A stretch of DNA of 63,583 bases, the filler included, from Octopus bimaculoides (lineage: Eukaryota): NCBI RefSeq assembly GCF_001194135.2. It is 3 parts of 3 records of this genome, joined end to end, with 100 filler letters (N's around TTAATTAATTAA, not from the genome) between each part and the next. Parts side by side here need not be neighbours in the genome. Positions count along the whole stretch, not along the records: positions 30,428 to 57,512 come from NC_068992.1; 2 more parts are not named here. One strand, given 5' to 3'. The notes under the pieces are model-generated. The model had not been told where the DNA came from, searched no databases, and was given only the letters and a program-made list of their open reading frames with translations. Shown one piece after another: positions 24,899-57,556 of this stretch. Position 1 is the stretch's first letter; each line of letters starts with the position of its first letter. Position numbers and translations under genes: made by a program.

Positions 24899-26748
24899 CT
24901 ATACTATAAAAGGCAGATTTTCTCTGTGTGTGTGTATGTTTGAAATTCATACATTTACACAATTCCAAATTTCTTGGATTAAAGAATCCCAATTAATATT
25001 CTAAATACAATTTGTTAGGTCACTGCATCATTTTTTCACTCAAAGAAATTCCTAATAACGAATAAAATCTATAAAACTACACGAGTAAACATTTTCTCCC
25101 TAATAAAATCTAATTTCCTCATTCTAATACAAATCCTTTCAACTCCTACTTTCTCTTATGAACCTTTACGAACAATCCAACAACAAATACAAAAAGAAAG
25201 GAAGGAGAAACACTGGCAGTAAAAGAAAACTATTTCAGTATCAAAACTGAAACAATCACNNNNNNNNNNNNNNNNNNNNNNNNNNNNNNNNNNNNNNACA
25301 TAAAAAAATAGTCACACATCTTTTTCAAATACGATCGACAAACATTTATTCCCTACAAACTGTGAGTTTTTTGGAAAATATTTTCGTAAATCTGCGGGTG
25401 TTAATCTGAAAATTTAACAATCTTTTTTGAAACACTTTTACTTACTAACATTTTTTTATTTAGTGTGTGTGTGTGTGTGTTGCCCATAGATATATACACT
25501 TAAGACTTAGTTGTGGGTTGGGACTTTCATCGGCAGAGGTCATTATTATTACGACCATATATATATACACACAGAATGCACATTAATACACACATACATA
25601 CAAATACCTATTATTCTTTTTTATTAAGTGTGTGTGTGTGTGTTGCCCATCTTAATATATAATGCTGAAGTTCTGTATCTGTGTGAAGCCTTTTTAAAAG
25701 TTTATAGAAATCCACATTTTCCACTTTTTCGTCCTAACCCTAACACTGTAGTGAAAATCGTGCTGGTGTTAATCTGAAAATTTAACAATCTTTTTTAAAA
25801 CACTTTTACTTNNNNNNNNNNNNNNNNNNNNNNNNNNNNNNNNNNNNNNNNNNNNNNNNNNNNNNNNNNNNNNNNNNNNNNNNNNNNNNNNNNNNNNNNN
25901 NNNNNNNNNNNNNNNNNNNNNNNNNNNNNNNNNNNNNNNNNNNNNNNNNNNNNNNNNNNNNNNNNNNNNNNNNNNNNNNNNNNNNNNNNNNNNNNNNNNN
26001 NNNNNNNNNNNNNNATTATTATTATTATTATTATCATTATTATTTAAAATTTTTCCCACAAGGGCGGCTTCGGGAAGGTGGAGAATAGTCGATTATATCG
26101 ACCCCTATGTCCAGGGTTACGGTTTTTGGGTTAGGGTTAGGGTTACGATGAGGGTTAGTGTTATGGTTACGGTTTTAGGGTCAGGGTTAGGGTTTAAGGA
26201 TTACGGTTACGTAATCGTGCGGGTGTTAGTCTGAAAAATTATCGAAATGTGAAAACTACCGACCCTGCCATCTGTTATAACTTTTGTTGTTCTGTTTAAT
26301 ATGTACATAGATTACGCCTCCAAACAAGACAACTTGCTGGGGAAAGAAAGCAACCGGTTTAAAAAGACAACATCTTTTGCCCAATCTGATACAATTCTGG
26401 CAGAACTGTGTAGCAACAGATCGCTAGCAATTGCTTCATCAGAAATTGCTGTCCTACTTCCTGCAAAAAGGAATTACCCTGCTATGTATAATCAAGGCAG
26501 TGCAAAAAGTTGTTTTGCACAAGCATTTCTATAGCCAATTAGACGGATGACATTTACGTACGCTTAATAATGTTACGCAAAACAACCTTCAGACCTTCCC
26601 TATTAATTTCATCGTCTTTTGAATTATGAACATTCATAAGGGTTTTTTCGTTGTATGGCTTTCTTTTTTAGTTGATTTTCAGCTAGCAAGACTTATTGGA
26701 GATGGCGTAATCAGTCACACCCGGACAACGTCGGGTTATACTGCTAGT
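24899..26748 (+). mobile_element. Helitron-type non-autonomous element(s) with PIF1 helicase relic and TTAGGG-like tract
   Basis: 5' TCTATACTATAAAA (24899) and ATCTTAATATATAAT (25649) starts. ILAELCSNRSLAIASSEIAVLL resembles the Helitron helicase; the 3' hairpin CCCGGACAACGTCGGG is followed by CTAGT at about 26744-26748. Confidence 0.7.
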
Positions 26749-26759
26749 ACTAAATAAAA

Positions 26760-28600
26760 TTAAGGAAGGATACCTACTGAGAAAGAATATGTTAAAGGTG
26801 AATCATCTCTTTAAGCTTTATAACAAAAACAAGAACCAATTAGGTTCCTTAATGAAAACCGTAAGAATATTCAGTAACAACATTGGGATGACTTTCAGAA
26901 TTGAAAAATATATTTTTGATGGAGATGAAATGAGGGAAAACTCATAAAAAGTATTGGAAAAGATTTACTAAAGAGGAGAATCTTTAGTCAGTAGAAATAT
27001 ATAGATATCTGGTAGTATTAGAAAGCAACTAAATGAAAAGTATAGAAATCTAGGAAACCCTCAGTAAACAATATTTTTACAGTATCAAGAAGATTCTAAA
27101 TTCAAATTTGAACATAGGGAAATACATAAATCCCATAAATAATGCAGTTTTTTCAGTTACATAAATTAAAAGTCAGAGGGGGACAGGATAAACTACCTGC
27201 ATCAACTTGCTATAAAAGCAGGTAGTAATTTTACGGTGTCCTTATTTTTAGTGCAAATTTTGAAGAGTGCAGTTCAATTTTAATAGTTATTTTTCAAAGC
27301 TATAATGGAAGTGACAACGTAACATAGTGGGCATATTTTGCTTTATGAGTTCAATAAAGGCAGCAACATAATGGAAGTGTGAGAAATTTTAATGCAGTAT
27401 ATGGGGATCAGACAATAAGTGCAAGTCAGTGTCAATGTTGGTTCCAGAAATTCCGAGCTAGAAACTACAGCCTAGAAGACGAACCTCATCCTTGAAGATC
27501 TGTAGAGCTTGATGAGGAAGTCCTACAAACCCTGGTGGAACAAAATTCCATTGTAACTGTTGAGGAACTAGCAGAGAAGCTTGGATTTGGTCATTCAACA
27601 ATTCATCGACACCTGCGTGCCATTGCAAAAGTCAGCAAAATGGGTCAATGGGTTTCTCACAAACTTTCTGTGTCTAATTGAGTGCAGAGAGTGAATGTGT
27701 GCTCTTCTTTGCTGCCACGCCTAACGGATGAACCTTTTTTGGACCAAATAGTGACTGGTGATAAGAAATGAGTTCTCTATAAAAATGTCAAGTGTCGAAG
27801 ACAGTGGGTAGGGAAAAGAGAAACACCGGCACCCCAGGCTAAAGAAGGTCTTCACCCACGTAAGGTATTGTTATCTGTTTGGTGGGATATGAAAGGTTTA
27901 GTCCACTTTGAACTTTTAAACGCAAACCAAATGATAGCAAAGGAGATCTACTGTGAGTAGATTGAGTGGCTTAAGTCAGTATTAGAAGAATAATGTCTTT
28001 GGTTTCAAGACAAAAGGATAATATTTGGCTACATACAGCAAGGATGACATTCCAAAGGCTAGAACAGTTTGAATGGGAAACGATGCCCCACACACCATAT
28101 TCACCAGACATTGCCCCATGCGATTATCATTTATTCCTTAGTCTTCAAAATCATTTGAATGGAAAAAATATGAATTCTGTAGACGAGGTAGAAACAGTAC
28201 TGGAGGAGTATTTTTCATCATGGACAATTGAAATGTTGGAAGAGGGGCCTTGCAAGTCTACCAGATAGATGGAAAAGCATTGCAGAAAATGAAGGAGAAT
28301 ATATTTTAGATGAAAAAAGAACTTTGCTTATCTTAATTTTGAAAAATAAAAGAAGTATAAAAAATACCGCATTATTTGTGGGATGACCCATTACCAGCAA
28401 TCAACCTGAGGGCAGTATCCTTAATAAGGTATGGAGCCAGAATTATTGAATGGGAAAAGGATGATTGGAAGAAAATTGACAGAAAAATGAGAAAGTAGCT
28501 CACAATGTATCTTCAATTTAATCTGGATTGGTTATACTGGAAAAGAACAGAAGAATGAAGAGAGTTAATGAGTGTCAAAGAGGTAATGGAACTAGAAAAG
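26760..28600 (+). mobile_element. R4/Dong-like LINE RT remnant interrupted by a mariner
   Basis: NHL..KLY..NKNQLGSLMKTVRIFSNNIGMTF precedes the mariner and (I)PAINLRAVSLIRYGARIIEW follows it. A further RT fragment RKAYDLVLHLWI lies at about 24660-24790. Confidence 0.7.
27129..28391 (+). mobile_element. mariner (Mos1/Hsmar-like) transposon, near full length, with stops
   Basis: Motifs HILLYEFNKG, GQWVSHKL, IVTGDKK and TPYSPDIAPCDYHLFLSLQNHL. TIRs TCCCATAAATAATGC / GCATTATTTGTGGGATGACCCA, with TA at both junctions. Confidence 0.93.
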
Positions 28601-28939
28601 AGAAGTCTAGAAATATAAATTTTAAAAAAATTAAGGATATTTACAGATTGTATAGAATTCCAAAAAGTGGAAAACAGAAAATGTAGAAAAGAGGAAATGA
28701 AATGAAAGAAGTTCACTCAGCATTTTTTCAAAAACAAGAGAAATAATAGACAACAAGGACAGCTGGGTATAACTAAACTTTTTGGGAGGGTTTAAGTTGA
28801 TTATATTGATCTCAGTGCTCAACTGGTACTTATTTTATTGACCCCAAAAGGATGGAAGACAAAGCTGATCTCAGTAGAATTTAAACTCAGAATGTAAAAC
28901 AGTTCTATACAAAATATATGCAGCTCATATGACATCAGG

Positions 28940-29464
28940 ACAGTATTCAAGAGTAATACAACACTTCGCAAATATCTCCTGCGAGTAAAACCACCAATAG
29001 AAGAGAATATGACCAAAAACTGCATGTACTCCATCCCATGCAGCTGTTTGGTAGGTTATACAAAGGCAAAACATGCTACCTCCTCAAAATAAGGGTAGAG
29101 GAACATCGCAAAGCTGTGACACGAGGAGATATTGATAAATTGGGTATAACTGATCATGGATGGAAAAATGGAGACCACCTCCCCCTGTGGGATGAAGTTA
29201 AAATAATAGACAGAGAACACCACTGGAAAATACGGAAACTAAAAGAAGCAGCATATATGCTAGGACACAACAACCTCCTAAGCAGACCGAGTGCAGATAT
29301 GAATAGCATATGGGAACTGGTACTAAGGAAGGATAGAAAATATTAGATTTATAAGCCCTAAGATTCACTCCATAATAGCCAACGGGCATATGGCGTAGTG
29401 GTTAAGAGCTCGGCTACTAACCCCAAGATTCCAAGTTTGATTCCAGGCAGTAACCTGAATAATA

Positions 29465-29507
<43 letters not shown>

Positions 29508-29620
29508 TAAATCTAAAAATACCTTCAGAATGAGAATCCAGGTTCGAAATTTCCCCAAGACACCTGATAAAAACTGGAGGGTATATAAGCCGAAATGTGT
29601 TAACAACAAACAAGATGAGG
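28940..29620 (+). mobile_element. Penelope-like element 3' end (GIY-YIG C-terminus and pLTR)
   Basis: Reads KNCMYSIPCSC.GRLYKGKT..LKIRVEEHRKAV..EVKIIDREHHWKIRKLKEA. The downstream region has a tRNA-like head, (AAT)n and a decayed hammerhead motif. Confidence 0.85.
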
Positions 29621-29899
29621 ACAAACATCCGTCAAATGTAAATGATGTAAATAATGCTCAGAATGTAAAGATGGACAAAATACTGCTAAGCATTTTGTCC
29701 AGCATCTTAATGATAGGTCTGAACTGGTGGGAACATAAGCCTTTCAAGATAGTAGACCCCACTACTTGCTGGTACTTTATTTTGTCAACCCTCAAATGGA
29801 TGAAAGTTTACCTTGGCAGGATTTGAACTCAGATTGTAAAGTGTCAGAAATACCACTAAACATTTTGTCTGATGTTCAAATGATTCTGCCAGCTCAATG

Positions 29900-29930
29900 C
29901 CTTAATAATAATAATAATAATAACAACAAC

Positions 29931-30019
<89 letters not shown>

Positions 30020-30090
30020 CGACGACGACGACGACGACGGCGACGGCGGCGGCTCCATCGCACTACCCAATTCTGCTAGCTCACCACGTT

Positions 30091-30149
<59 letters not shown>

Positions 30150-30160
30150 TAATAATAATA
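29900..30160. repeat. Graded compound microsatellite (AAT)n-(GAT)n-(GAC)n-(GGC)n, then a SINE head and (AAT)n
   Basis: Directly visible. Confidence 0.95.
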
Positions 30161-30164
30161 AGGA

Positions 30165-30327
30165 CTATTACATACTGTGAAAGGATTCAGTGATGATATC
30201 GGGATGGAGTTTGGCCTTGAAAAGTGTGCCAAAGCCACTTTTAAGAAAGGGAAACTGGTAAAGTCAAGTTCAATAGAATTAGATGTCGAAACAGTAATTA
30301 AAGAACTTGAGCAGAAACAAACCTATA
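30165..30327 (+). mobile_element. R4/Dong-like LINE RT fragment
   Basis: Reads KGFSDDIGMEFGLEKCAKATFKKGKL, directly after an (AAT)n tract. Confidence 0.8.
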
Positions 30328-30371
30328 NNNNNNNNNNNNNNNNNNNNNNNNNNNNNNNNNNNNNNNNNNNN

Positions 30372-30383
30372 TTAATTAATTAA
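30372..30383. other. Artificial scaffold-join linker TTAATTAATTAA inside an N-gap
   Basis: Palindromic 12-mer with stops in all six frames, embedded in N runs; an identical linker is at 57557. Confidence 0.85.
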
Positions 30384-30427
30384 NNNNNNNNNNNNNNNNN
30401 NNNNNNNNNNNNNNNNNNNNNNNNNNN

Positions 30428-30475
<48 letters not shown>

Positions 30476-30519
30476 CAAATAATATAATATATTATATAAT
30501 AATAATACAAACTGACAAT

Positions 30520-30925
30520 AGGTGGTATAAACATGTGCCAAACCAGGTACACAACAACGACTAGACCACAATCATCTGGAATATCCCGGGTGAAACCGAC
30601 AAATAAAAAAAGCTAATCACCCAGACATAATAATCAAGGACTGGGGAAAAAACATTTGCTTACTGGTAGGCATTGTAGTTCCTACTGATTAAAATATTGT
30701 CCAAAAAAAAAAAAGTGGAGAGATTTTCAAAGTAGAAAGACCCCGTAATTGAAGTATTCAAGATTTGTAATAACAATACCAATAATAATTGGAGCATTGG
30801 GCATGCCAAAAAAAAAAAAGAAGAGAAACATGAACAAAATACGTAAAAGCTATACCTGGATCCTCAACACTACACACTATCCCAAAATAGCCCTACTAGA
30901 AACAACCCACATCGTACGCAAGACT
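30520..30925 (+). mobile_element. R4/Dong-like LINE 3' restriction-like endonuclease fragment
   Basis: Decayed HPDIIIKD, IPIIIGALG and YPKIALLETTHIVRK motifs. Confidence 0.7.
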
Positions 30926-31519
30926 GACGATTCAATAATACAACTTAAACAAATCAACCCACTTTTCCGCTTCATTCACAATTAATGAGTAACTAATGAA
31001 AAGAGTTATAAGTTTTTCGTCATCGTCATCGTAGTAGTAATGCCATGCAAAAGACTTTTGGAAATTGTGCATGATCTTCGACCCGAAGGTCCTCTGGAAG
31101 AGACTACTCAGACTGTTGATACCTAGATTCAATCTTAGGCCATCATCATTCATACCCTCAACTAGTCATCTACAGAAATATTGGGCTGTTTTCCGCTAAT
31201 GGCTTATTTCGACTGTCCACCTGTGACTGTGATTAAATTTATTAGGAACACTACGCGATGAATATCTAATACCAAACAATCTTAATCTCTATATCTAAGC
31301 TGCATTAAACTTTGGCAAGCTTACTTTTACCTATTCCGAATTACTTGAAAGGTGATGTTCCCTTCCCTCTCTTCTATTTGCTAATACGTTGGTTTACCTA
31401 CCAACGCGCTGTTTCACTTTAAGGATGCTTATTTACTCATCCATTATGATATTTCAACTGTTGTCCATTGTTTCAAATACGTTTTAGAATTGTCGTTCTA
31501 GCCTTTTTTAAACACTTAC

Positions 31520-31568
31520 ATATGATTCGTCCCAAAGAATCAACCTTTAAATAAGAGTTTTGCTTCCA
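31520..31568 (-). CDS. Candidate exon, same gene, YWTD-like (phase 0 to 1)
   Basis: Acceptor agctttcgctag and donor ATAT|gtaagt. Reads WKQNSYLKVDSLGRII(Y?), resembling LAVDxxGRxLYW. Confidence 0.5.
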
Positions 31569-31906
31569 CTAGCGAAAGCTATACATATCTTTCAGAAAGC
31601 TCCATACCAATTTAACTTTATGCAGCATTTGCTGTTCGTTTATGCACAGGCTATGTGGGAAGATAGAATAAAGGGGCTTTTGTTGGCTTATCTCTCTGAA
31701 AAAAATAGCTCCCTTTGCTGTTGAAGAAAATAAACTCACAGAGAGGAAGTTTCAACGTTTTCCTTCAATTTCATTACACCATTTATGTGACTGTTTGTGA
31801 CAAGAAATTTCGCTTTCATGTGAAACAACTATATTTTGTAGTCATTATCTGTAATCTACTCCCAAAACATTCCAGCAGCTCTACTTTGCATCGCTTGCAA
31901 ACTTAC

Positions 31907-31972
31907 ATGTTCTATGATCATTAAAGTGCAACGACCTCCACAATAACCGGCCTTCAATTTGATTTTCCGTTC
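31907..31972 (-). CDS. Candidate exon, same gene (66 nt)
   Basis: Acceptor tgtttccggttcatctag and donor CAT|gtaagt. Phase 0 reading is ERKIKLKAGYCGGRCTLMIIEH; a phase-1 frame is also open. Confidence 0.5.
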
Positions 31973-32679
31973 CTAGATGAACCGGAAACAGATTGCCGTG
32001 CTACTCATAAACTTTCTCGGTAGTTGAATTATTTGGTTGGAAAAAATACCACCAAAGCAACTTAAACCGTCCAAAGGACGGGTGCGTTTGCTATTATGTA
32101 CATATAAATATTTATATGTATATTAGAGGACAAAATAGATTAGAGGACTTAATCTATTCCTGCAATATGAACGCAACATTCGAAATACTGTATATTTATG
32201 TATAGAAATATGAACGAATGAGTATACATGTGTAAATGTGTATTCAAATATGCTTTTATATTAGTATTTGTGTGCGTGTATATGTGTTTGTTTGGGTGGG
32301 TGGTTGTGTGCGTGTGTGTGTGTGTGTGTACCTTTGAGAGTGGGTGTATGTATTATCCACCGATGTGTGTCGATGAAGCGTGTAAGCATCAAGAGAAGTT
32401 ATGCTACACTTTTGAAGTGGTTCAGAAGAATTAAGTCGTTTGCACCGAATTAGAAGCGATCCTGTGTCATTCATTCTTGACGTGTAAAGGACTGTGGACT
32501 AATGATTAGCTGGGAACCAGTAACCAAGCATCCTACTGGCCCAGATCACTAACCCCTTTCTCCAGTAACTTGGGGTAGGGTTTAGTCGTTACACACAAAC
32601 ACATACACTCACACGTGCGCGCGCACGCACACACACACACGCACGCACGCACGCACGCACGGACACATATTTTATTAAA

Positions 32680-32841
32680 GGAGTGGGTGTGTGGTAAGAA
32701 GCTTACTTCCCAACCACATGGATTCGGGTTCAGTCCCATTGCGTGAGACCTTGGGCAAGTGTCTTCTACTATAACCTCGGGCCGACCAAAGCCTTGTGAG
32801 TGGATTTTGTAAACGGAAACTGAAATAAGCCTGCCGTATAC

Positions 32842-32877
<36 letters not shown>

Positions 32878-32913
32878 NNNNNNNNNNGAAACTGAAATAA
32901 GCCTGCCGTATAC

Positions 32914-32971
<58 letters not shown>

Positions 32972-33135
32972 ACTTGTGTGTCTGTGTTTGTCCCCCAACA
33001 TCGCTTGACAACCGATGTTGGCGTTTACATCCCCGTAACTTGTCGGTTCGACAAAAGAAATCAATAGAATAAGTACTAGACCTACAAAAAATAAGTCCTG
33101 GGGTCGAGTTGTTGGACTAAAGGCAGTGCTCCAAT
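32680..33135 (+). mobile_element. tRNA-derived CORE-type SINE (OR2-like) with internal microsatellite
   Basis: Head GGAGTGGGTGTGTGGTAAG..GGGTTCAGTCCC, core CCTTGGGCAAGTGTCTTCTA, internal (TA/TG)n and 3' GGGGTCGA..GGCAGTGCTCC. Confidence 0.85.
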
Positions 33136-33236
33136 TAAAAGAGTAAAATAGTATAGCTATATATCTCTCTATTTCTTTCTCTTTATATATATATATATAT
33201 ATACATATGTGTGTCTGTGTCTGTGTTTGTGTGTCT

Positions 33237-33306
<70 letters not shown>

Positions 33307-33939
33307 ATGGGGGGAGGGGAGTAAACATACGTCCGCAGCCCGCATTTTTATTTAAATAAATACTGCAGTTTATATGACATCTAAAAGAAATTCTTTGACG
33401 TGTATGTCATGCCCCAGCATGGCCGTACTCCAGTTACTGAAACTCGTAAAAGAATATAAGTGGAAGAAAAAAATACATACTCATTTCTTTCCCTCCCCTT
33501 CTCTCCCCCCCCTCTCTCTTTCTTCGTCTTTTGTTGTTTTTTTTGTTTTTGTTCTTAAGTTCCATCAGATCTAAACACAGCTGCTTTTCAGTGATTCTGT
33601 CCAGGCGTCAAATGATTGATTAATCTTACAAGGAAGATTGAACAATGAGATATGTTTTTATTAATTTACTGCTGGCTACACCACCACCGCCAACAACAAC
33701 AACAACAACAACAACAATAACAACATCAACATCACCTTCGTCCTCAATGTTAGCAGCAGCAGCATCATTTTCATTCGTAACTACATCGTTCCCATTTAAA
33801 AATTCTTTTTATACTTTTATATATCCTTTTATATATCAGTCCGGTGTATATTTTTACCATTCATTCGACCATAAAATTACAACTGTAACGACGAAGACGA
33901 TGATGATGATGATGATGTTTGCAACAATAATAATAATCA

Positions 33940-35135
33940 TTTCTGCTGTTGGCACAAGGCCTGATATTCTTGGGGAAGGGACCAGTCAATTGCATCGACC
34001 CCAGTGTTTCACTGGTACTTTATTTATCGACCCTGAAAGGATGAGAGGCAAAGTCGACCTCGGCGGAATTTGAACTCAGAACATAGCGACGGGCGAAATA
34101 CCGCTACGCATTCCGATTCTACCGGCTCGCCGACTTTAATAGTGATAATTATAATCCTTTCGAATTTCGGCCCAGGGTCAGTGATTACATAGGCCTCAGT
34201 ACTGGATGGAAACTATATTTTATCGGCCCCGAATGGAAGAAGAGCAAAGTTGACATCAGCGGGATTTGAACCCAGTACGTAATGTGACACGACTAAATAT
34301 ATTAAGGTAATCTTTTTCCGATTCCCTAACGATTCTACCAAATAACAAATCCTTTGTACTATAGGCACAAGGGCTGAAATTTGGTGGGAGGGAGCTTGCC
34401 GATTACATCGACCCCAGTACTCAACTGGTACTTATTTAATCCACCTAATAATCATTTCAAACTTTACCACAAGGTCAGCAATATACGGAAAGGGGATAAG
34501 TCCATTATCTCGACCCCAGTGCTCAACTGGTACTTATCGACCTCCGTAAAGGTGAAAGCCAAAGTCGACCTCTGCGGCATTTGAACTCAGAACGTCAAAA
34601 CGAACGAAATACCACCAAGCACTTAGTGCAGCATGCCAAGGATATTGCCAACTCGTTGCCTTATTCTGCCTAATAATGCTTTCTAATATTAATCCTTTCT
34701 ACTATTTACCTTTAGAGCACCGAAGGCTGGATATAGTAACCTTTAGGAGGGACAAACAAGAGCGCCTAATAATCGACGTGGCAGTACCAGGAGATTAATA
34801 TATCATCATGAAAGAAAGAGAAAAGGTTGATGAATATGGAGACCTGAGAAATGAGATCGCTAAGATGTGGCAAACATAGAGATCATCCCTATTGTCATCG
34901 GAGTACTGGGTTCAATACCACCCAATCTGACAAAACATCTGGAAACCTTAGAGATACCCTACAATCTAGATGTCTAAAAAAAAGTTGGCTTTCCTTGGAA
35001 TTGCACACATATTGTGTAAAGTACTGTCTGTCTGAGGTTCTTGCTGTGACTTGACAAACAGTACAAACCCCCGTTAGACACAATATCTCCAATCAACAAC
35101 CTCACGATATTGTATACTGTATACTGTGCGAAGTC

Positions 35136-35196
<61 letters not shown>

Positions 35197-35600
35197 TCTA
35201 CTATAGGTTCAAGTCCAGAAAAAGTTGGCACAGGGGACGAGTCGATTACATCAACTCCAATGCTTAACCGGTACTTATTTTATCGACCCCGAAAGGATGA
35301 AAGGCAAAGCTGAACTCAGAACGTAAAGACGGATAAAATGCCGTTTAGCATTTTGTCCGACATGTTAACTATTGTGCCGGGATAATAATTCTTTCTACTA
35401 TAAGCACAAGGTCTGATATTTTGTGAGAACGAAATATTTGATTACATCGAACCCCCACCCCTACCCCAGTACTAAATTATTACTCGTTTCATCGACCCCA
35501 AAAGGTGAAAAGCCAATAAGCATCGGCGGAATTTGAACTTAGAACGTAAAGATGGGTGATATGCCGCTAGGCATTTTGTCCGGCGTTGTCCGTTATTATT
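33940..35600 (-). mobile_element. Cluster of about 5 tRNA-derived SINE copies separated by (AAT)n, with an R4/Dong REL fragment at 34741-35080
   Basis: Recurring ATCGACCCCGAAAGGATGAAAGGCAAAGTCGACCTCGGCGGAATTTGAACTCAGAAC (B-box reverse complement). The REL fragment reads LIIDVAVPGD..KEREKVDEYGDLRNEIAKMW..IPIVIGVLG. Confidence 0.85.
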
Positions 35601-36315
35601 AACACTCACCGTTTTAATAATAATAACAACAACAATAATGGAATTTTTCCACAAAAGCAAAATAAAAGGAACGTTACAAAGACAAAAATACAAATATAAA
35701 AACGCCACATCGTGAGAGAATTCAGGGAAATAAAATATATCTACCTGTACCATTAAAATACTTAAAACATAACAATAACCTTAAAAGGTGCCTGACTAGA
35801 TACGACATATCGGGGCATCGTGAAAACACCGATTGATCTGAAGATAAAGGCGAGTGCTTTCTCCTTAATGCCATTCACTAAAAAAAAATACCGCGAGTTT
35901 TGAGCCAACCAGTCACAATGAATTCGCCTCTCTTATTCCCCTTTCATAAAAATTTACCCAAGGTCAGGCGTTTCTTTCTCTCACACTCACCTTTTTTTCT
36001 TCAAGTGGTACTGGAAGAAGACAATAACGGCTTCGTTTGTAAAGAGGGGAAAATAAACAAGCTAACCTCAAACAATTCAACCTCGTTCATCACACTAACA
36101 CTTTTGTTGTAGCCACCAGGTACAAAAACGCTGTATACGATCTTCCTTGTTAAGAGAAAGCAACAGAATGATCTTTACGATTAAGCCCGGTGGACAATTT
36201 AATCTTTCCCACACGGCACATCAATTGTTCGACGTAATCCTACAGACAGATGAGTGGAGAAACACTTGAACGCTCGTCTGACAGTTTTATTTGCCCTACC
36301 GCATCTTTGACATAC

Positions 36316-36430
36316 CCTGTTGTTTGTAATATCCGTGCTTGTATAGGCTTTCACACATTGGTAACTATCCATACTCTTCAAACTGGAAGACTCTAGCGGT
36401 CTATCAGTGTTCATACTCTCATCTAGGTCT
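36316..36430 (-). CDS. Candidate exon, same gene (phase 2 to 0)
   Basis: Acceptor ctttcattttgtag and donor AGG|gtatgt. Only one frame is open: DLDESMNTDRPLESSSLKSMDSYQCVKAYTSTDITNNR. Confidence 0.6.
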
Positions 36431-36819
36431 CTACAAAATGAAAGCATGTTGTACAAACTACAAATATGTCTACGCTTGGAGAATTGTCGGCAGAGGCCAA
36501 GTAGATATCACGTTTTATCGACTACTCATAATGCATCTCCGTGAAGGATACGAGCTGAAAGAAAGCCGTTTTAACAAAAGAATACCAAACGTTTCTCTGT
36601 AGATGGAGTAACTTCATAAAACAATATTGTATCAACAAAGCGGGCATGAGTCTATGCAAACTTGCAATATAGAGTTGATGGTTGTGACTCAAGAAGCTAA
36701 ACCAGTGTTATGGAATATCAATGGAAAAGAGATGGTACGAATACACATAAATTTCCCCAGATAAAGGAAATGTAGAGAATGCACATACTGACAAGAAAAT
36801 TAAATATATTTTCCTTGAT

Positions 36820-37184
36820 ATTATGGTCATATCCATGCATACATACACACACACATTCACACACACAGACATGCACACATACATACGTACATAAATGCAT
36901 ACATACATACATACATACATGCATACACACACATAGAGACATACATTCATACATATGTATATGTATGCAAACACACACACACATATACATACATACATAC
37001 ATACATGCATACACACACATAGAGACATACATTCATACATATGTATATGTATGCAAACACACACACACATATACATATATACATACATACATGCATACAC
37101 ACACATAGAGACATACATTCATACATATGTATATGTATGCAAACACACCCACACATATACATATATACATACATACATATATAT
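36820..37184. repeat. Minisatellite of about 70-80 nt units built from CA/TACA microsatellites
   Basis: At least 3 copies of catgcatacacacacatagagacatacattcatacatatgtatatgtatgcaaacac. Confidence 0.85.
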
Positions 37185-37502
37185 NNNNNNNNNNNNNNNN
37201 NNNNNNNNNNNNNNNNNNNNNNNNNNNNNNNNNNNNNNNNNNNNNNNNNNNNNNNNNNNATGCATTTTGCCCGACATGCTAAAGATTTTACCAATAATAA
37301 TCCTTTCTACTACAGACACAAGTCCTGAAATTTCGAGGAAGGGGACTAGTCGATTACATCGATTCCAATGTTTCGCTGGTATCTAAGTTATTAACCCCGG
37401 AAGGATGAAAAGCCAAGTCGACCACGGCGGAATTTGAACTCAGAACGTAATGACGGACGGAATGACGCTAAGCAATTCATCTGGCGTGCTAACGATTTTG
37501 CC

Positions 37503-37534
<32 letters not shown>

Positions 37535-51173: not shown

Positions 51174-51397
51174 TCACACAGACATCCACATGTATATACA
51201 TACATACATACATACATACATACATGCATACATATGTATGGTAAGAACCTTGCTTCCAAACCACATGGTTCCAGGTTCAGTCCCACTGCATGACACCTTG
51301 GGCAAATGTCTTCTACTGTAGCCTCGAGCCAACCAGTGACTTATAAGTGAATTCGGTAGACGGAAACTGAAAGAAGCTCGTCGTATATATATGTATA

Positions 51398-51451
<54 letters not shown>

Positions 51452-51691
51452 TATCTGTCTGTCTGTGCCTGTGTTTGTCTCCCCATCATCGGTGCTGGTG
51501 TGTTTACATCCCTGTAACTTAGCGGTTCGGCAAACAGGACTGATAGAGTAAGAATCAGGCCTTTTAAAAGGTAAGTACTGACAGGGACAACGAAACTTTC
51601 GGAAATAGAATTTCCCACAGATAAACACACACATACACACACACACAAGCCTTCATGCATGCGTACAAACACACGTACATACATATACACA

Positions 51692-51751
<60 letters not shown>

Positions 51752-51855
51752 TCGTGAAGGTGTACTGTGGTTAATGGTATGGCTCAGTTGTAATTTTCTT
51801 TTCGGTGCTAGACGGATTACAGAAGTCCCTTAGTAATGGCATATAGGCATATAGG

Positions 51856-51889
<34 letters not shown>

Positions 51890-52202
51890 NNNNNNNNNNN
51901 NNNNNNNNNNNNNNNNNNNNNNNNNNNNNNNNNNNNNNNNNNNNNNNNNNNNNNNNNNNNNNNNNNNNNNNNNNNNNNNNNNNNNNNNNNNNNNNNNNNN
52001 NNNNNNNNNNNNNNNNNNNNNNNNNNNNNNNNNNNNNNNNNNNNNNNNNNNNNNNNNNNNNNNNNNNNNNNNNNNNNNNNNNNNNNNNNNNNNNNNNNNN
52101 NNNNNNNNNNNNNNNNNNNNNNNNNNNNNNNNNNNNNNNNNNNNNNNNNNNNNNNNNNNNNNNNNNNNNNNNNNNNNNNNNNNNNNNNNNNNNNNNNNNN
52201 NN

Positions 52203-52253
<51 letters not shown>

Positions 52254-52295
52254 AGGGAGAGAAAGAGAGAAAGAGAGAGAGAATGCCAAGCTTAC

Positions 52296-52383
52296 CTTAG
52301 ATTGTAACGGTGCTGTAATATGTATTTGATGTATAATATTTCCTTGATCCAGAACGAATAGCAACTTCTCCAGCTGTTTTAGT
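52296..52383 (-). CDS. Candidate exon, same gene (phase 2 to 0)
   Basis: Acceptor tttatttattgctag and donor AAG|gtaagc. Reads LKQLEKLLFVLDQGNIIHQIHITAPLQSK; phase-compatible with the 53207 exon; other frames are closed. Confidence 0.65.
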
Positions 52384-52514
52384 CTAGCAATAAATAAAGT
52401 TTAACCACGATTAATGTTATTTTAATCATTTAATATGGGCAATAGTACACACGATAATAATAATAATAACAATAATAACAACAACAATAATACTACTACT
52501 ACTACTACTACTAC

Positions 52515-52582
<68 letters not shown>

Positions 52583-53206
52583 GTAAATCATTTGAATTAT
52601 TCGTTCTTAACGTGATCTCAGAGCTATTTGGGCTGTTAGAGCACCAACAAAGATTTATTTTCATGAAGTGTTTTTAGGGATAGTCATCTCTCGTTGTAAC
52701 GTCATATAATGACACACATTCATAAGCACACACGCACACACATACACGCATAGATAGATAGATAGATGAGAAGACAGACAAATAGACATACAGATAGATA
52801 GATAGTCAGTCAGACAGACAGACAGTTAGTCAGACAGACAGACAGTCAGTCAGACAGACAGTCAGACAGACAGTCAGTCAGACAGACAGAAAGACAAATA
52901 GACAAACAGACAGATAGGTAGTCAGTTAGACAGACAGTCAATCAGACAGGCAGATAGATAGGCAGACAGACAGATATACGACGGGCTTCTACGTTTTCCC
53001 ACTGCCAAATTCTCTCACAAGGTATTGTTCAGCTCGGAGATACAATAATAGATACTTGCCCAAGACACTTGCCCAAGATACTTGCCCAAGTGGAACCGAA
53101 CCCGAAGTCACGAAGTTACACAGCGATCCTCTTATCCTCACAGCCATATCTGCGCGTAAGTTAAAAGAAACGCGTACGATCAACATTATATCGTCGATAT
53201 ATTTAC

Positions 53207-53324
53207 CTTGTATGTCGAATAGAATAATAGAGTGTGGAGTCATAGACACTAATATCTGCTATTGCCACATTATTGGTGTGGACTGGTTTACTGATGGTGG
53301 ACCCAACCAGAAGGGCTGTGAATT
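53207..53324 (-). CDS. Candidate exon of YWTD-like beta-propeller gene (phase 1 to 2)
   Basis: Acceptor cttttatatttcag and donor AAG|gtaaat. Only one frame is open: FTALLVGSTISKPVHTNNVAIADISVYDSTLYYSIRHT. Confidence 0.65.
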
Positions 53325-55111
53325 CTGAAATATAAAAGTTTAAAATTTAAATTCGTTGAAACTATTGTTATCTCTCGATTGGAAAGTTTTCCTCACAAAC
53401 TGGAATAATACCGTCATGAAAACTCGTTCTTACGATATGAGGGCTTGATGCTTGTATAGAGAAATAACAGAATTAACAGATGTTTACATTGCTTTCAAAT
53501 TTTGGTACAAGGCCAGCGAGTTCAAGGAGGGGGTAAGTTTCAGTTTCCGTCAACCAAATTCACTCACAAAGCTTTCGTCGACCCAAGGATATAGAAGAAA
53601 CTTGCTCAAGATGTCACGCAGTGAGACCGAACCACATAGCCACACCTGAACCTATTTATTCGACTCCACTTTTTATGTTGGTGAAGGTGCATCGCCTAGA
53701 GTTTAAGGTGTGGAACTTCGATTTCCGGATCGGGTGATGCGTTGCGTTCTTGAGCAAGAGACTTCATTTCACGTTGCTCCACTCCACTCAATAGTAACTG
53801 AGAAAACCTGCAACGCAAAGGCCTCCCTTCAGGAGTGACGTTGTGATCTCGGTCACTTAAACGCCATGGAAACCGAGTAACCGGCTCTTTGAGCCTAATG
53901 GCTCGAGACAGTACGTACTAATATATATGTTTAGATTTTGAGTGGGATATAATCTGTCAGACTTAAAACATACGTATAAGATGCACATTTGGCTCAAAAA
54001 TACCTCACCCTTATCGTATATACGAAGTTGGATCTCTCATAAACGTTAATTCACTAAAAACTATTTTTACCTGAATGTGGGCAGCTGAAATTGGGGTTCG
54101 TATAATAAGCAAGTGCGTCTTTTATACCATCAAATATTGGTTTCCTATTTTGGCACAAGGCCAGCAATTTCGAGGTAGGGTTAATTCGATTACATCGATC
54201 CCAGTGATCAATTGCTACCTATTTTATCGACCCCGAAAGACTGAAGGGCAAAGTCGACCTCGGGGGAATTTGAACATAAAACGGCCAAGACATACCGCAC
54301 GCCCCCTTGACTCTAAGAAAGTGAGGGCCCAAGTGAAGACGGATACATTAAGATATCGTATCCTACACACATTATTGAATGTGTGCAGGATGTACTTCAT
54401 TTTCAAGAGGATGTACTTCATTTTCAAGAGCGTAGGATGTAATTTACGGATGATTTGACTACTTTTACTAGTAAATCAAATAACAACGGAGAGGTACACA
54501 CGCTGGTTTGTGGGACGAAATTAAATAAGAGTTATAACATTCAAATCATACCCAAAGAATTTGTGAAATGTTTAAAATATATTCAACCGGAAATTGAAAC
54601 TGGGTCGTCAGCAACATTTCCCAAGTACCATCCCCTCTACTAAATCCGAGTTGCCCTGTGACGAAACTACTTCATACAAACAAAAACTAATGTTTCTATT
54701 CGAAACATTGTAAGGTTCTTCTTATTCAACCATTCCACGTATCTATTCAATTGTATCTGTTTATATTCTATTTAGCTTTCAGTTTTCTTTACTCAGAATA
54801 CAAAAGTCGAGAATATTTTAGGTTTCTAACTTGCAACACTTGCGATGCTTTAAATGACAGGATTTATTCAAAATAAATTATAAAAATATTTACATAGTTT
54901 ATTTATGTAATCTATTCGTCCGCTACGCGACGAAGAAAGACACCATCGGCCTTATTCAGTAGTAAAATAAGTACAAGAGATCAAGTTGGATGGTACATTA
55001 CAAAACGTATTCTCTTGTTTAGATAAAAAGTGAAAAGTTCAACATACCTGCTTTGTCGTGTTTCCAAAATGGTTCATTTGAAATTACTGAATAAGAAAAG
55101 AAAAAGCATTT

Positions 55112-55157
<46 letters not shown>

Positions 55158-55342
55158 NNNNNNNNNNNNNNNNNNNNNNNNNNNNNNNNNNNNNNNNNNN
55201 NNNNNNNNNNNNNNNNNNNNNNNNNNNNNNNNNNNNNNNNNNNNNNNNNNNNNNNNNNNNNNNNNNNNNNNNNNNNNNNNNNNNNNNNNNNNNNNNNNNN
55301 NNNNNNNNNNNNNNNNNNNNNNNNNNNNNNNNNNNNNNNNNN

Positions 55343-55377
<35 letters not shown>

Positions 55378-55451
55378 CGTTAATATCGAAGAGTGACCAT
55401 GACTTCTCAACATGACATTGGTGGATAAATATTCTTGTTAACCCACAAATA

Positions 55452-55503
<52 letters not shown>

Positions 55504-56856
55504 GTATGCATGCATACATATATATAAAGTATATTTATATATCGTAACTATTATGTTAAACTGTTGTATATCCAAATTTGGCCAAATGCGTTTTTGTTTT
55601 TTCAATATATATTTTTGCTTGAAATAGCCGGTTCTTTTGGTCAGACTATCGTATCTCCAGGTACTTCAGATACCAAGATATCGCAAATTGCTATGGAATG
55701 GTGAAACTATTTTTTTGTTTTCTGAAAAAGCAACGTTTTGGACTTACGACACTTACCATAATAGCAACAACATATATATATGTACATGTGTGTGTGTGTC
55801 TGTGTGTGCGTGTGTCCGTGTATGTGTACACATACATACATACATACATACATACATACATACATACATACATACATACAAGTTGGTATACGAATGAGAA
55901 ACTCAAGTTCCATAACATAGCACACCAGGAAGAACGCTTAGCGGCATTTCGTTCAAATTCCACCGAAGTCGACTTTACGTTTCATCGTTTCGGGATCGAT
56001 AAAATAAGTACCAGTTGAGCACTGAGATCGATGCAATCGAACGTCCTCTCCTCCGAAATTGCTGATAAGATTACGGATATGCAAATAAGATTACGGATAA
56101 TGTCGCAGCCAGTTTCAGAAAGAAATTCCGACGAACGTTTGTACGCAAATGTAAATGAAAAGTATATATTGCGGGAACATGTATCCAGTAAGTTCTTGTA
56201 TCACCTTTGGGCAGTAACCGTCAGAGAAATACCCTGCAAATATTTTAGAGTAGTTGTCTGATGGACTCTAGTAAATGCACTTGGAATGAAGTCGTATAAT
56301 CTATGGCCTCAAACAAATCACACATTTCAGCACGAAAATCTCTTACAGACATATATAAAAAGATGCGCGCACGCACACATGCACGAGCGCCGCATTCAAA
56401 CCCATTTGTATATGAACGTGTGTGTGTGTGTGTGTGTTTGTGCGTATACACATACAGGTATGCATATATAGACACACATACATACGTTCATATATATATT
56501 ATATATATATTATATTATATTTATCTTATGATATTTACTTTACTTTATATTATACTCATTTATTGTGCTTTTAATTATTAATTTTTCTATATGTGATAAT
56601 GGATTTTCATCGATGAGTTCTTGAAAATTGGTTATTTTCCCTAAAACTATATATTTCATANNNNNNNNNNNNNNNNNNNNNNNNNNNNNNNNNNNNNNNN
56701 NNNNNNNNNNNNNNNNNNNNNNNNNNNNNNNNNNNNNNNNNNNNNNNNNNNNNNNNNNNNNNNNNNNNNNNNNNNNNNNNNNNNNNNNNNNNNNNNNNNN
56801 NNNNNNNNNNNNNNNNNNNNNNNNNNNNNNNNNNNNNNNNNNNNNNNNNNNNNNNN

Positions 56857-56891
<35 letters not shown>

Positions 56892-57556
56892 CATACATAC
56901 GCACACACTCACTCGCACACACATACACACACACACACACACACACATACTCATATATCCGCAAACTCACGAACACGCTCACACAAACACACATACTCTC
57001 ACACAAACATACTCACACACACACAAATGTATGGTGGGGTTGTCTTTGTTTTCTCCGTAACGTAGGATGCGAAAGAGACCGATGGAATTTTCTAAAAAGC
57101 ACAGACTTTAAAAAAATATGTTCTGGGTTCGTTTTGGTGTTGCCCAAGCATGGCCGCAGTCCAAGGGTTGAACAAGTAACAGATAAAAGATAAATGATGC
57201 AATGTGTTCGTTAGATCATCTCGCCGATCGACATGGTGTTTAACGATGACGAATACAACCCTGATGAAAGAGATGCATTCGATTTTAAACAGTGGTAAAT
57301 ACGGTTTTAATTTCGAAAGCAAGTGCTAAAAGTATAGGACGACCATATTTGACGAATCCAGATAGTCACGTTATGTACTTAACTGACAGACTGAAAATTC
57401 AATGCGACCCAAAATATAAACAGCTTCTGTGGGAAAGAGAGAGGGAGAAAGTGTGAGCGTGCGTTTAAATTCGTATACATGCATACAAGCATACATGATT
57501 TATATATATATANNNNNNNNNNNNNNNNNNNNNNNNNNNNNNNNNNNNNNNNNNNN

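What the first reader, a model, noticed from the sequence alone, without database searches (positions are those of the whole stretch)
31520..53324. Hidden multi-exon gene encoding a divergent YWTD-like beta-propeller protein, invisible to the ORF track
Seen: 12 short minus-strand segments with canonical AG/GT signals, several with only one open frame. They form two phase-compatible chains: 53324 to 52296, and 48286, 47910, 45655, 44736, 43696, 42379, 39172, 36430, 31972, 31568. The joined peptide includes ADISVYDSTLYYS, VLGQMYLFTTE..LWSQSMKG, FFIDPIGYTIYY, LMDWVYEA..GLW and LKVDSLGRII(Y). Known: LDL-receptor class B repeats follow L-x-I/V-D-xxx-g-x-l-Y-W-T-D at roughly 40-aa spacing. Inference: this is an extracellular propeller (LRP/ROS1/nidogen-like fold) that has lost the WTD signature, possibly from a lineage-specific family. 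One link (phase 0 to 2, between 52296 and 48286) is missing and may lie in the 51890-52202 gap.
Basis: partly seen in the sequence, partly recalled or inferred. Interest (0 to 1): 0.72.

Follow-up and report, generated by a model that had tools for sequence, protein, structure and literature searches.

The report
Octopod chordin gene, first seven exons
It is not a new beta-propeller protein, and about half of the proposed exons are wrong.

Summary
A real spliced gene lies on the minus strand. Seven exons join into one open frame of 258 codons: 55086-55048, 53324-53207, 52383-52296, 47910-47736, 45655-45515, 44736-44663 and 43696-43555. This peptide is 89.5% identical, without gaps, to residues 1-257 of Argonauta hians GAB1606046.1 (800 aa, labelled 'hypothetical protein, partial').

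In the Argonauta locus the same seven exons have identical lengths and AG/GT at the same places. DNA similarity stops within about 40 nt of the exon ends, mostly within 10. Differences fall 29/11/118 by codon position, giving dN/dS of 0.03.

The Argonauta protein has CHRD and three VWC domains and matches solved human chordin over CHRD1-4 and CR2-4 (E 5e-52). The window peptide itself matches human chordin CHRD1 (E 8e-10).

- Five are exactly right.
- One (47910) has the right acceptor but the wrong frame and donor.
- Six (48286, 42379, 39172, 36430, 31972, 31568) have no support.
- One real exon (55086-55048) was missed.

No exon is hidden in the gaps. The YWTD propeller reading fails: CHRD domains are SOD-like Greek-key barrels. 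This is a known family, so interest is low.

The parts
55048..55086 (-). Exon a (39 nt, enters in phase 2). Encodes (I)SNEPFWKHDKA, the linker before CHRD1.
   Evidence: Residues 1-11 of P0001 match at 100%. The exon is flanked by TTATTCAG| and |GTATGT (PWM 8.8 / 9.9). The colinear blastn block 55033-55126 matches L001 10049-9955 at 81%. The Argonauta exon 9996-10034 has the same length.
53207..53324 (-). Exon b (118 nt). Encodes EFTALLVGSTISKPVHTNNVAIADISVYDSTLYYSIRHT, the start of CHRD1.
   Evidence: tblastn against P0001 residues 11-51 gives 80% identity, E 5e-16. blastn block 53197-53334 matches L001 13201-13064. The Argonauta exon has the same length and the same AG/GT. Only one frame is open.
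52296..52383 (-). Exon c (88 nt, ends in phase 0). Encodes (R)LKQLEKLLFVLDQGNIIHQIHITAPLQSK.
   Evidence: P0001 residues 51-81 match at 90%. blastn block 52292-52407 matches L001 14012-13897. The acceptor is TTGCTAG| and the donor |GTAAGC.
47736..47910 (-). Exon d (175 nt, frame 0). Encodes VCWGKCTSLPQVCGVWRKVPVLYQQYLWDKRVSIVLTTALHPDGEVKGRVITTNDKHK, the second half of CHRD1, including the Cys that corresponds to human Cys235.
Evidence: P0001 residues 80-138 match at 85%, E 3e-30. blastn block 47728-47918 matches L001 20863-20673 at 81%, E 1e-46. The exon aligns to human chordin 'lvCGVWRavp...hpsGEvwG'.
45515..45655 (-). Exon e (141 nt). Encodes ETFTTVLWSQSMKGEGGRANFFIDPIGYTIYYNITLARPFTGINKLA, the start of CHRD2.
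   Evidence: The exhaustive HMMER scan gave P0001 at E 9.5e-18 with 87% identity over all 46 residues. blastn block 45509-45661 matches L001 21650-21498.
44663..44736 (-). Exon f (74 nt). Encodes LNQERITVSVLYNRKTILMDWVYEA, the middle of CHRD2.
   Evidence: P0001 residues 185-210 match at 92%. blastn block 44658-44739 matches L001 22066-21985 at 88%.
43555..43696 (-). Exon g (142 nt, leaves 1 nt). Encodes DGIINGLWMKLKKRTLRQLTRGKLVIKVNTQTTKPFSGRILPRITCG, the end of CHRD2 and the linker Cys that corresponds to human Cys403.
   Evidence: P0001 residues 211-257 match at 88%, E 3e-24. blastn block 43548-43698 matches L001 25947-25797 at 82%, E 7e-37. 'ilpritCG' aligns to human 'iaarksCd'.
30428..43554 (-). 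Start of the long intron after exon g, running to the edge of the piece.
   Evidence: In Argonauta this intron is 16.3 kb (25941-42201), and only 13.1 kb remain here. No match to Argonauta exons 8-10 was found by tblastn or by blastn at word size 7.
41181..41209 (.). Short conserved non-coding block in that intron (28/29 identical to Argonauta).
   Evidence: It is colinear and single-copy in both loci; it matches L001 28512-28540, E 6e-06.
41013..41044 (.). Second short conserved non-coding block (29/32 identical).
   Evidence: It is colinear and single-copy; it matches L001 29125-29156.

Best explanation
The piece carries the 5'-internal part of an octopod chordin (Sog/Chordin-type) gene, transcribed from the minus strand. 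Seven short exons are spliced into 777 nt. They encode the linker, CHRD domain 1, CHRD domain 2, and the cysteine of the CHRD2-3 linker. The rest of the gene lies outside the piece: a signal peptide and CR1 upstream, and CHRD3-4 plus three VWC/CR domains downstream.

By homology, the product is a secreted BMP antagonist. In chordin, the VWC domains bind BMP2/4 together with Twisted gastrulation, and Tolloid cleavage releases the ligand. The four CHRD domains form a compact SOD-like beta-barrel array that binds sulfated glycosaminoglycans and is thought to set where the complex diffuses and localises.

Shown here: the exon structure, the orthology, purifying selection, and homology of the encoded peptide to chordin CHRD1.

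Inferred: CHRD2 identity (from colinearity), secretion, BMP antagonism, and GAG binding.
For: - A single exon (46 aa) found Argonauta hians GAB1606046.1 at 87% identity, E 9.5e-18, among 1.84 billion representatives.
- All of its residues 1-257 map to seven window exons in order on one strand.
- The joined CDS is open for 258 codons and is 230/257 identical without gaps.
- The Argonauta locus has the same seven exon lengths with AG/GT at the same places. Nucleotide differences by codon position are 29/11/118; dN is 0.061, dS 1.875, dN/dS 0.033.
- blastn between the two loci aligns only the exons, apart from repeats and two roughly 30-nt blocks.
- Pfam on the orthologue gives VWC x3 (E 1e-24) and CHRD (E 5e-12).
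- The orthologue matches human chordin 9rd6_A at E 5e-52, over chordin 165-641 (CHRD1-4) and 692-928 (CR2-4).
- The window peptile itself matches chordin chains 9igm_A, 9rd6_A and 9qvv_A at E 8e-10 to 5e-9.
- Both cysteines of the human Cys235-Cys403 disulfide are conserved.
- CHRD domains, as opposed to VWC domains alone, are what separates bona fide chordin from chordin-like genes (PMC9977687).
Against: - Pfam CHRD scores only 13.6 bits (E 0.13, cut-off 24.1) on the window's first domain and nothing on the second. CHRD2 is therefore assigned by position, not by its own significant match.
- Only about a third of the gene is visible. No start codon, signal peptide, CR1 or VWC domain lies in the piece.
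- The Argonauta model is itself a partial prediction labelled 'hypothetical protein'.
- No transcript evidence could be consulted.
- The human GAG-contact Arg193 appears to be Asp here. This rests on my count, using an inferred +10 offset between chain index and paper numbering.
Confidence: 0.93

Rival explanations
1. One reading: a divergent YWTD-like (LDL-receptor class B) six-bladed beta-propeller from a lineage-specific family, encoded by 12 exons between 53324 and 31520.
For: Two 'h-x-h-D-x(5-6)-L/I-Y-Y' motifs really occur in frame. The product's family is extracellular and all-beta.
Against: The peptide is homologous to chordin CHRD1, a Greek-key barrel. The motif spacing is about 125 residues, one per CHRD domain. 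Two of the five quoted motifs are out of frame or non-coding (VLGQMYLFTT, LKVDSLGRII). Six of the 12 exons have no counterpart in the orthologue.
Confidence: 0.01
2. There is no gene: the chain is a chance assembly of AG...GT-flanked open segments in AT-rich, repeat-rich non-coding DNA.
For: Motif counts and open-frame lengths are within chance. Three word-indexed protein searches found nothing. This remains the best account of segments 48286, 42379, 39172, 36430, 31972 and 31568.
Against: For the seven exons it is excluded. They show 89.5% ungapped protein identity to an octopod orthologue, conserved exon boundaries, dN/dS of 0.03, and conservation limited to the exons.
Confidence: 0.02
3. 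It is a chordin-derived pseudogene or a truncated paralogue, rather than the functional chordin orthologue.
For: Only part of the gene is visible. No exon downstream of 43555 was found in 13 kb. Pfam's CHRD model barely recognises these domains.
Against: There are no stops or frameshifts in 258 codons and all 12 splice sites are canonical. dN/dS is 0.033 with saturated dS. The missing downstream exon is expected to lie outside the piece, because the orthologous intron is 16.3 kb.
Confidence: 0.04

Closest known systems
Argonauta hians GAB1606046.1 (Ahia01_000887000, 'hypothetical protein, partial'; BAAFZT010000048.1:22654191-22706627)
   Same: It is the orthologue. Identity is 89.5% over residues 1-257. 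The seven exons have identical lengths and splice positions, in the same order and on the same strand.
   Different: It comes from a different octopod species: CDS nucleotide identity is 79.6% and dS about 1.9. Intron sizes differ (window 1723/823/4385/2080/778/966 nt against 3039/729/6672/648/343/3737 nt). The database entry is not named as chordin.
Human chordin (CHRD, UniProt Q9H2X0; PDB 9RD6, 9IGM, 9QVV)
   Same: The architecture is CHRD1-4 followed by CR2-4 in the orthologue (E 5e-52). The window peptide aligns to CHRD1 (E 8e-10). The Cys235 and Cys403 equivalents, the GVWR motif and the 'GE-x-G' strand are conserved.
   Different: Identity is roughly 25-30%. Octopod CHRD1 has a 10-residue insert with two extra cysteines (KVCWGKCTSLPQ). 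CHRD2 is too diverged to score on its own. The Arg193 equivalent appears not to be conserved. CR1 and the signal peptide were not seen here.
Molluscan chordin (Crassostrea gigas, Lottia; Tan, Huan and Liu, PMC8789067)
   Same: It is the same gene family in the same phylum, where BMP2/4 and Chordin pattern the dorsal-ventral axis (abstract).
   Different: No sequence comparison could be run here. The cephalopod gene's expression and role are unknown.
Chordin-like / kielin-chordin-like proteins (CHRDL1/2, KCP)
   Same: They are secreted BMP modulators with VWC domains.
   Different: They lack CHRD domains (PMC9977687; the Argonaut eggcase preprint). The sequence encoded here consists of CHRD domains, so it is not one of them.
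LDL-receptor class B (YWTD) beta-propellers
   Same: They are extracellular, beta-rich, and have a superficially similar 'hydrophobic-D...aromatic-aromatic' strand motif.
   Different: There is no profile match, the repeat length differs (about 125 against about 40 residues), and the fold differs (Greek-key barrel against six-bladed propeller).

Membership tests
Chordin / Sog | CHRD domains are present; this is what separates bona fide chordin from chordin-like genes | tested here: met
   Residues 28-157 of the window peptide align to human chordin CHRD1 in three solved chains, E 8.4e-10 to 5.5e-9, and as a profile at E 3.7e-8. Pfam CHRD covers the whole first domain (3-120 against profile 1-117) but at only 13.6 bits, below its cut-off.
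Chordin / Sog | Four tandem CHRD domains | tested here: inconclusive
   The orthologue P0001 aligns in one stretch to human chordin 165-641, which is CHRD1-4. The window itself holds only the first two. CHRD2 is assigned by colinearity and by its conserved end 'GRILPRITCG', not by a significant match of its own.
Chordin / Sog | C-terminal VWC (CR2-CR4) domains that bind BMP | not testable with these tools
   They are present in the orthologue: Pfam VWC x3 at E 1e-24, aligned to human 692-928. The corresponding exons lie beyond the edge of the piece.
Chordin / Sog | N-terminal signal peptide and CR1 | not testable with these tools
   The Argonauta model is 5'-partial and starts at exon a. No conserved block was found in window 55087-57512 against L001 1-9995.
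Chordin / Sog | Inter-domain disulfide between CHRD1 strand 6 and the CHRD2-3 linker (human Cys235-Cys403) | tested here: met
   Both cysteines are conserved: VCGVWR in exon d and RITCG in exon g. The disulfide is described in PMC13382577.
Chordin / Sog | BMP antagonism, Tsg co-binding and Tolloid cleavage | not testable with these tools
   These are biochemical properties, inferred from family membership only.
LDL-receptor class B (YWTD) beta-propeller | Match to the Ldl_recept_b repeat profile | tested here: not met
LDL-receptor class B (YWTD) beta-propeller | Six repeats of about 40 residues, each with a YWTD-type strand | tested here: not met
   In the true reading frame the 'D...LYY' motif occurs twice, about 125 residues apart, once per CHRD domain. 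The homologous solved structure is an eight-stranded Greek-key barrel.
Chordin-like (CHRDL) / kielin-chordin-like | VWC domains only, with no CHRD domain | tested here: not met
   The encoded sequence is CHRD-domain sequence. For the definitions.

The most novel reading that the evidence does not exclude
The octopod chordin locus may carry lineage-specific features worth a developmental biologist's time. The first is a two-cysteine insert (KVCWGKCTSLPQ) in CHRD1, next to the cysteine that cross-links the CHRD array, together with loss of one human GAG-contact arginine. Together these could change how the protein is tethered in the matrix. The second is a pair of roughly 30-nt intronic blocks (41181-41209 and 41013-41044). 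They are kept at 91-97% identity although synonymous sites are saturated, and they contain TAATC/GATTA cores, so they could be conserved enhancers of chordin expression. Cephalopod BMP-chordin axis patterning is essentially undescribed.
Probability: 0.3. Interest if true: 0.4.

Novelty: new member of a known kind. Interest (0 to 1): 0.25.

Why it matters
Chordin is the main BMP antagonist in dorsal-ventral patterning. It has been lost repeatedly in some spiralian lineages (annelids, PMC9977687) and is used in mollusc axis patterning (PMC8789067). An intact copy under strong purifying selection in two octopod genera shows that cephalopods keep it. It also gives exact exon coordinates for probes, knock-downs and annotation repair, since the closest public entry is an unnamed partial 'hypothetical protein'.

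There is also a methodological point. Intrinsic splice and open-frame statistics, plus three word-indexed searches, all pointed to 'no gene'. A single 46-residue exon in an exhaustive search overturned that.

Beyond this, it is an expected housekeeping-level result for a metazoan genome.

Tried and rejected
The peptide contained an out-of-frame exon and lacked half of CHRD1.
These were false negatives. The Argonauta protein is in that collection and shares long exact words with the queries.
A 5733-aa query was too long.
- **Null models** were tried: PWM splice sites plus open frames against Markov-1/3 shuffles, open-segment length distributions, motif counts, and the longest phase-compatible chain. 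I had provisionally concluded 'not beyond chance', and that was wrong for seven exons.
- **Repeat overlap:** the claimed exons are not in within-window repeats.
- **Rfam and tRNA scans** found nothing.
- **Exact look-up of ten window ORFs** found none in the collection.
- **A weak match at 40004-39900** to P0001 residues 261-295 (34% identity, E 9) was rejected as chance. The other exons are 80-100% identical, and there is no DNA match to Argonauta exon 8.
- **A TE-relic reading of 36430 and 44270-43920** got no support from Pfam. It rests only on similarity to a dispersed copy in the Argonauta intron.
- **Literature:** 33 papers hold both 'chordin' and 'cephalopod', and none of the 12 listed describes a cephalopod chordin gene. 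A second search was uninformative.

Full report
**Material.** The piece 30428-57512 has 37.5% G+C and 11 assembly gaps. It is dense in TG/CA, TATC and AAT microsatellites and in SINE-like repeats on both strands. No Rfam family or tRNA gene is present.

**Checking the observation.**
- Each anchor follows an AG, and GT donors allow the phases claimed.
- Several segments do have only one open frame: 53324, 45655 and 43696.
- None overlaps a within-window repeat.

**A false start.** It also hit nothing in the word-indexed search of 5.8 billion proteins. The same search returned nothing for 4182 aa of minus-strand and 4679 aa of plus-strand open segments.

Null models then looked unfavourable:
- YWTD-like motifs numbered 7, against 3-5 +/- 2 expected.
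- The excess of strong AG/open-frame/GT candidates on the minus strand was modest: 13 against 5.9 +/- 2.5, and 6 against 1.6 +/- 1.2. Much of it came from one locus, 47910.

On that evidence I was heading for 'chance'.

**The turning point.** It matched one protein at 87% identity over its whole length, E 9.5e-18. That protein is GAB1606046.1, 'hypothetical protein Ahia01_000887000, partial' from the octopod Argonauta hians, 800 aa. The earlier negatives were therefore tool false negatives, because this protein is in that collection.

**Exon map.** tblastn of the Argonauta protein against the piece places its residues 1-257 on seven minus-strand segments, in order:

| Exon | Window coordinates | P0001 residues | Identity |
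|---|---|---|---|
| a | 55081-55049 | 1-11 | 100% |
| b | 53328-53206 | 11-51 | 80% |
| c | 52385-52293 | 51-81 | 90% |
| d | 47913-47737 | 80-138 | 85% |
| e | 45656-45516 | 139-185 | 87% |
| f | 44740-44663 | 185-210 | 92% |
| g | 43711-43556 (true exon from 43696) | 211-257 | 88% |

With splice sites resolved, the exons are 55086-55048, 53324-53207, 52383-52296, 47910-47736, 45655-45515, 44736-44663 and 43696-43555. Their lengths are 39, 118, 88, 175, 141, 74 and 142 nt, 777 nt in all. All are flanked by AG and GT. They join into one open frame of 258 codons, 230/257 identical to the Argonauta protein without a single gap.

**Cross-species test.** The Argonauta locus was fetched as L001, 72 kb.
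- The seven exons there have exactly the same lengths, with AG/GT at the same positions.
- Nucleotide differences fall 29, 11 and 118 at codon positions 1, 2 and 3.
- dN is 0.061 and dS is 1.875 (saturated), so dN/dS is 0.033.
- blastn between the loci gives unique colinear matches that end within about 40 nt of each exon boundary, mostly within 10. Everything else is microsatellite or SINE, apart from two short intronic blocks.

This is the signature of a functional coding gene.

- Five segments are exactly right.
- The acceptor at 47910 is right, but the exon is 175 nt in frame 0, not 33 nt in frame 2. VLGQMYLFTT is an out-of-frame reading.
- Segments 48286, 42379, 39172, 36430, 31972 and 31568 have no counterpart in the protein or the locus.
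- Exon 55086-55048 was missed.
- Exon c ends in phase 0 and exon d starts in frame 0, so no link is missing and nothing coding hides in gap 51890-52202.

**Gaps.** No exon touches a gap. Four gaps lie in intron 3. The ungapped alignment to the orthologue, and the continuity of the human chordin alignment through that junction, show the scaffold is coherent there at gene level. Three other gaps are flanked by exact or near-exact duplicates, which are unmerged contig overlaps.

**Downstream of 43555.** In Argonauta the next exon (residues 259-295) lies 16.3 kb after exon g. Only 13.1 kb remain here. The two conserved intronic blocks place window 41013 opposite L001 29156, still 13 kb short of that exon. 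The next exon is therefore most likely beyond the edge of the piece, or possibly in a gap.

**What the gene is.**
- Pfam finds three VWC domains (E 1e-24) and CHRD (E 5e-12) in the Argonauta protein.
- Against solved structures it matches human chordin 9rd6_A at E 5e-52. One stretch covers chordin 165-641 (the four CHRD domains) and another covers 692-928 (CR2-CR4).
- The window's own 258-residue peptide matches the chordin chains 9igm_A, 9rd6_A and 9qvv_A at E 8.4e-10 to 5.5e-9 over CHRD1. A two-sequence profile gives the same result.
- The two cysteines of the human Cys235-Cys403 inter-domain disulfide are conserved, as VCGVWR and RITCG.
- Pfam's CHRD model alone is not convincing on the window peptide: 13.6 bits on domain 1 and nothing on domain 2. 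CHRD2 is therefore assigned by colinearity.
- CHRD domains are SOD-like eight-stranded Greek-key barrels (PMC13382577), not propeller blades. Ldl_recept_b never matched.
It is the equivalent strand of CHRD1 and CHRD2, about 125 residues apart.

**Mechanism (inferred from the family).** Chordin is a secreted BMP antagonist acting with Twisted gastrulation. BMPs bind its VWC domains. The CHRD array binds sulfated glycosaminoglycans between CHRD1 and CHRD4 and is proposed to govern diffusion and localisation (PMC13382577). The part encoded here would supply half of that array. The Arg239 equivalent is conserved; the Arg193 equivalent appears to be Asp (my count, with an inferred numbering offset).

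**Novelty.** This is a known family in a phylum where it is already studied (PMC8789067). No paper listed in the library describes a cephalopod chordin, and the closest entry is unnamed. It is therefore a new member of a known kind, of low interest.

Noticed in passing
window 41181-41209 and 41013-41044: Two short blocks in the long intron after exon g are 28/29 and 29/32 identical to colinear single-copy sites in the Argonauta intron (L001 28512-28540 and 29125-29156), although synonymous sites are saturated. Both contain TAATC/GATTA cores. They are possible conserved regulatory elements.
   Followed up: partly
window gaps 32878-32887, 38309-38588, 49456-49465: These gaps are flanked by direct duplicates: 62 nt at 100%, 260 nt at 100% (38049-38308 = 38627-38886), and 95 nt at 98%. 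The contig ends overlap and were not merged, so the gaps are artefacts and the true sequence is shorter.
   Followed up: yes
window 49792-49904, 42030-42118, 32725-32831, 51287-51383, 53538-53620 and others: A SINE-like family of about 90-110 nt is present in many copies in both orientations. It also occurs about 12 times in the 72-kb Argonauta locus at 77-90% identity, so it is shared across octopods.
   Followed up: partly
It is a dispersed repeat, probably derived from a transposable element. Pfam found nothing.
   Followed up: partly
window 47910-47875 (exon d): Relative to human chordin, octopod CHRD1 has a 10-residue insert with two extra cysteines (KVCWGKCTSLPQ), just before the conserved cross-linking cysteine. 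It is identical in Argonauta.
   Followed up: no
tool behaviour, against 35, 38: The word-indexed protein search missed an 87-90% identical protein that is a cluster representative in its own collection. Only the exhaustive scan found it, so negatives from the indexed search should not be treated as absence.
   Followed up: yes
whole piece: On the sense (minus) strand T exceeds A (8292 against 7485). This fits a transcribed intron-rich region, but it was not tested further.
   Followed up: no
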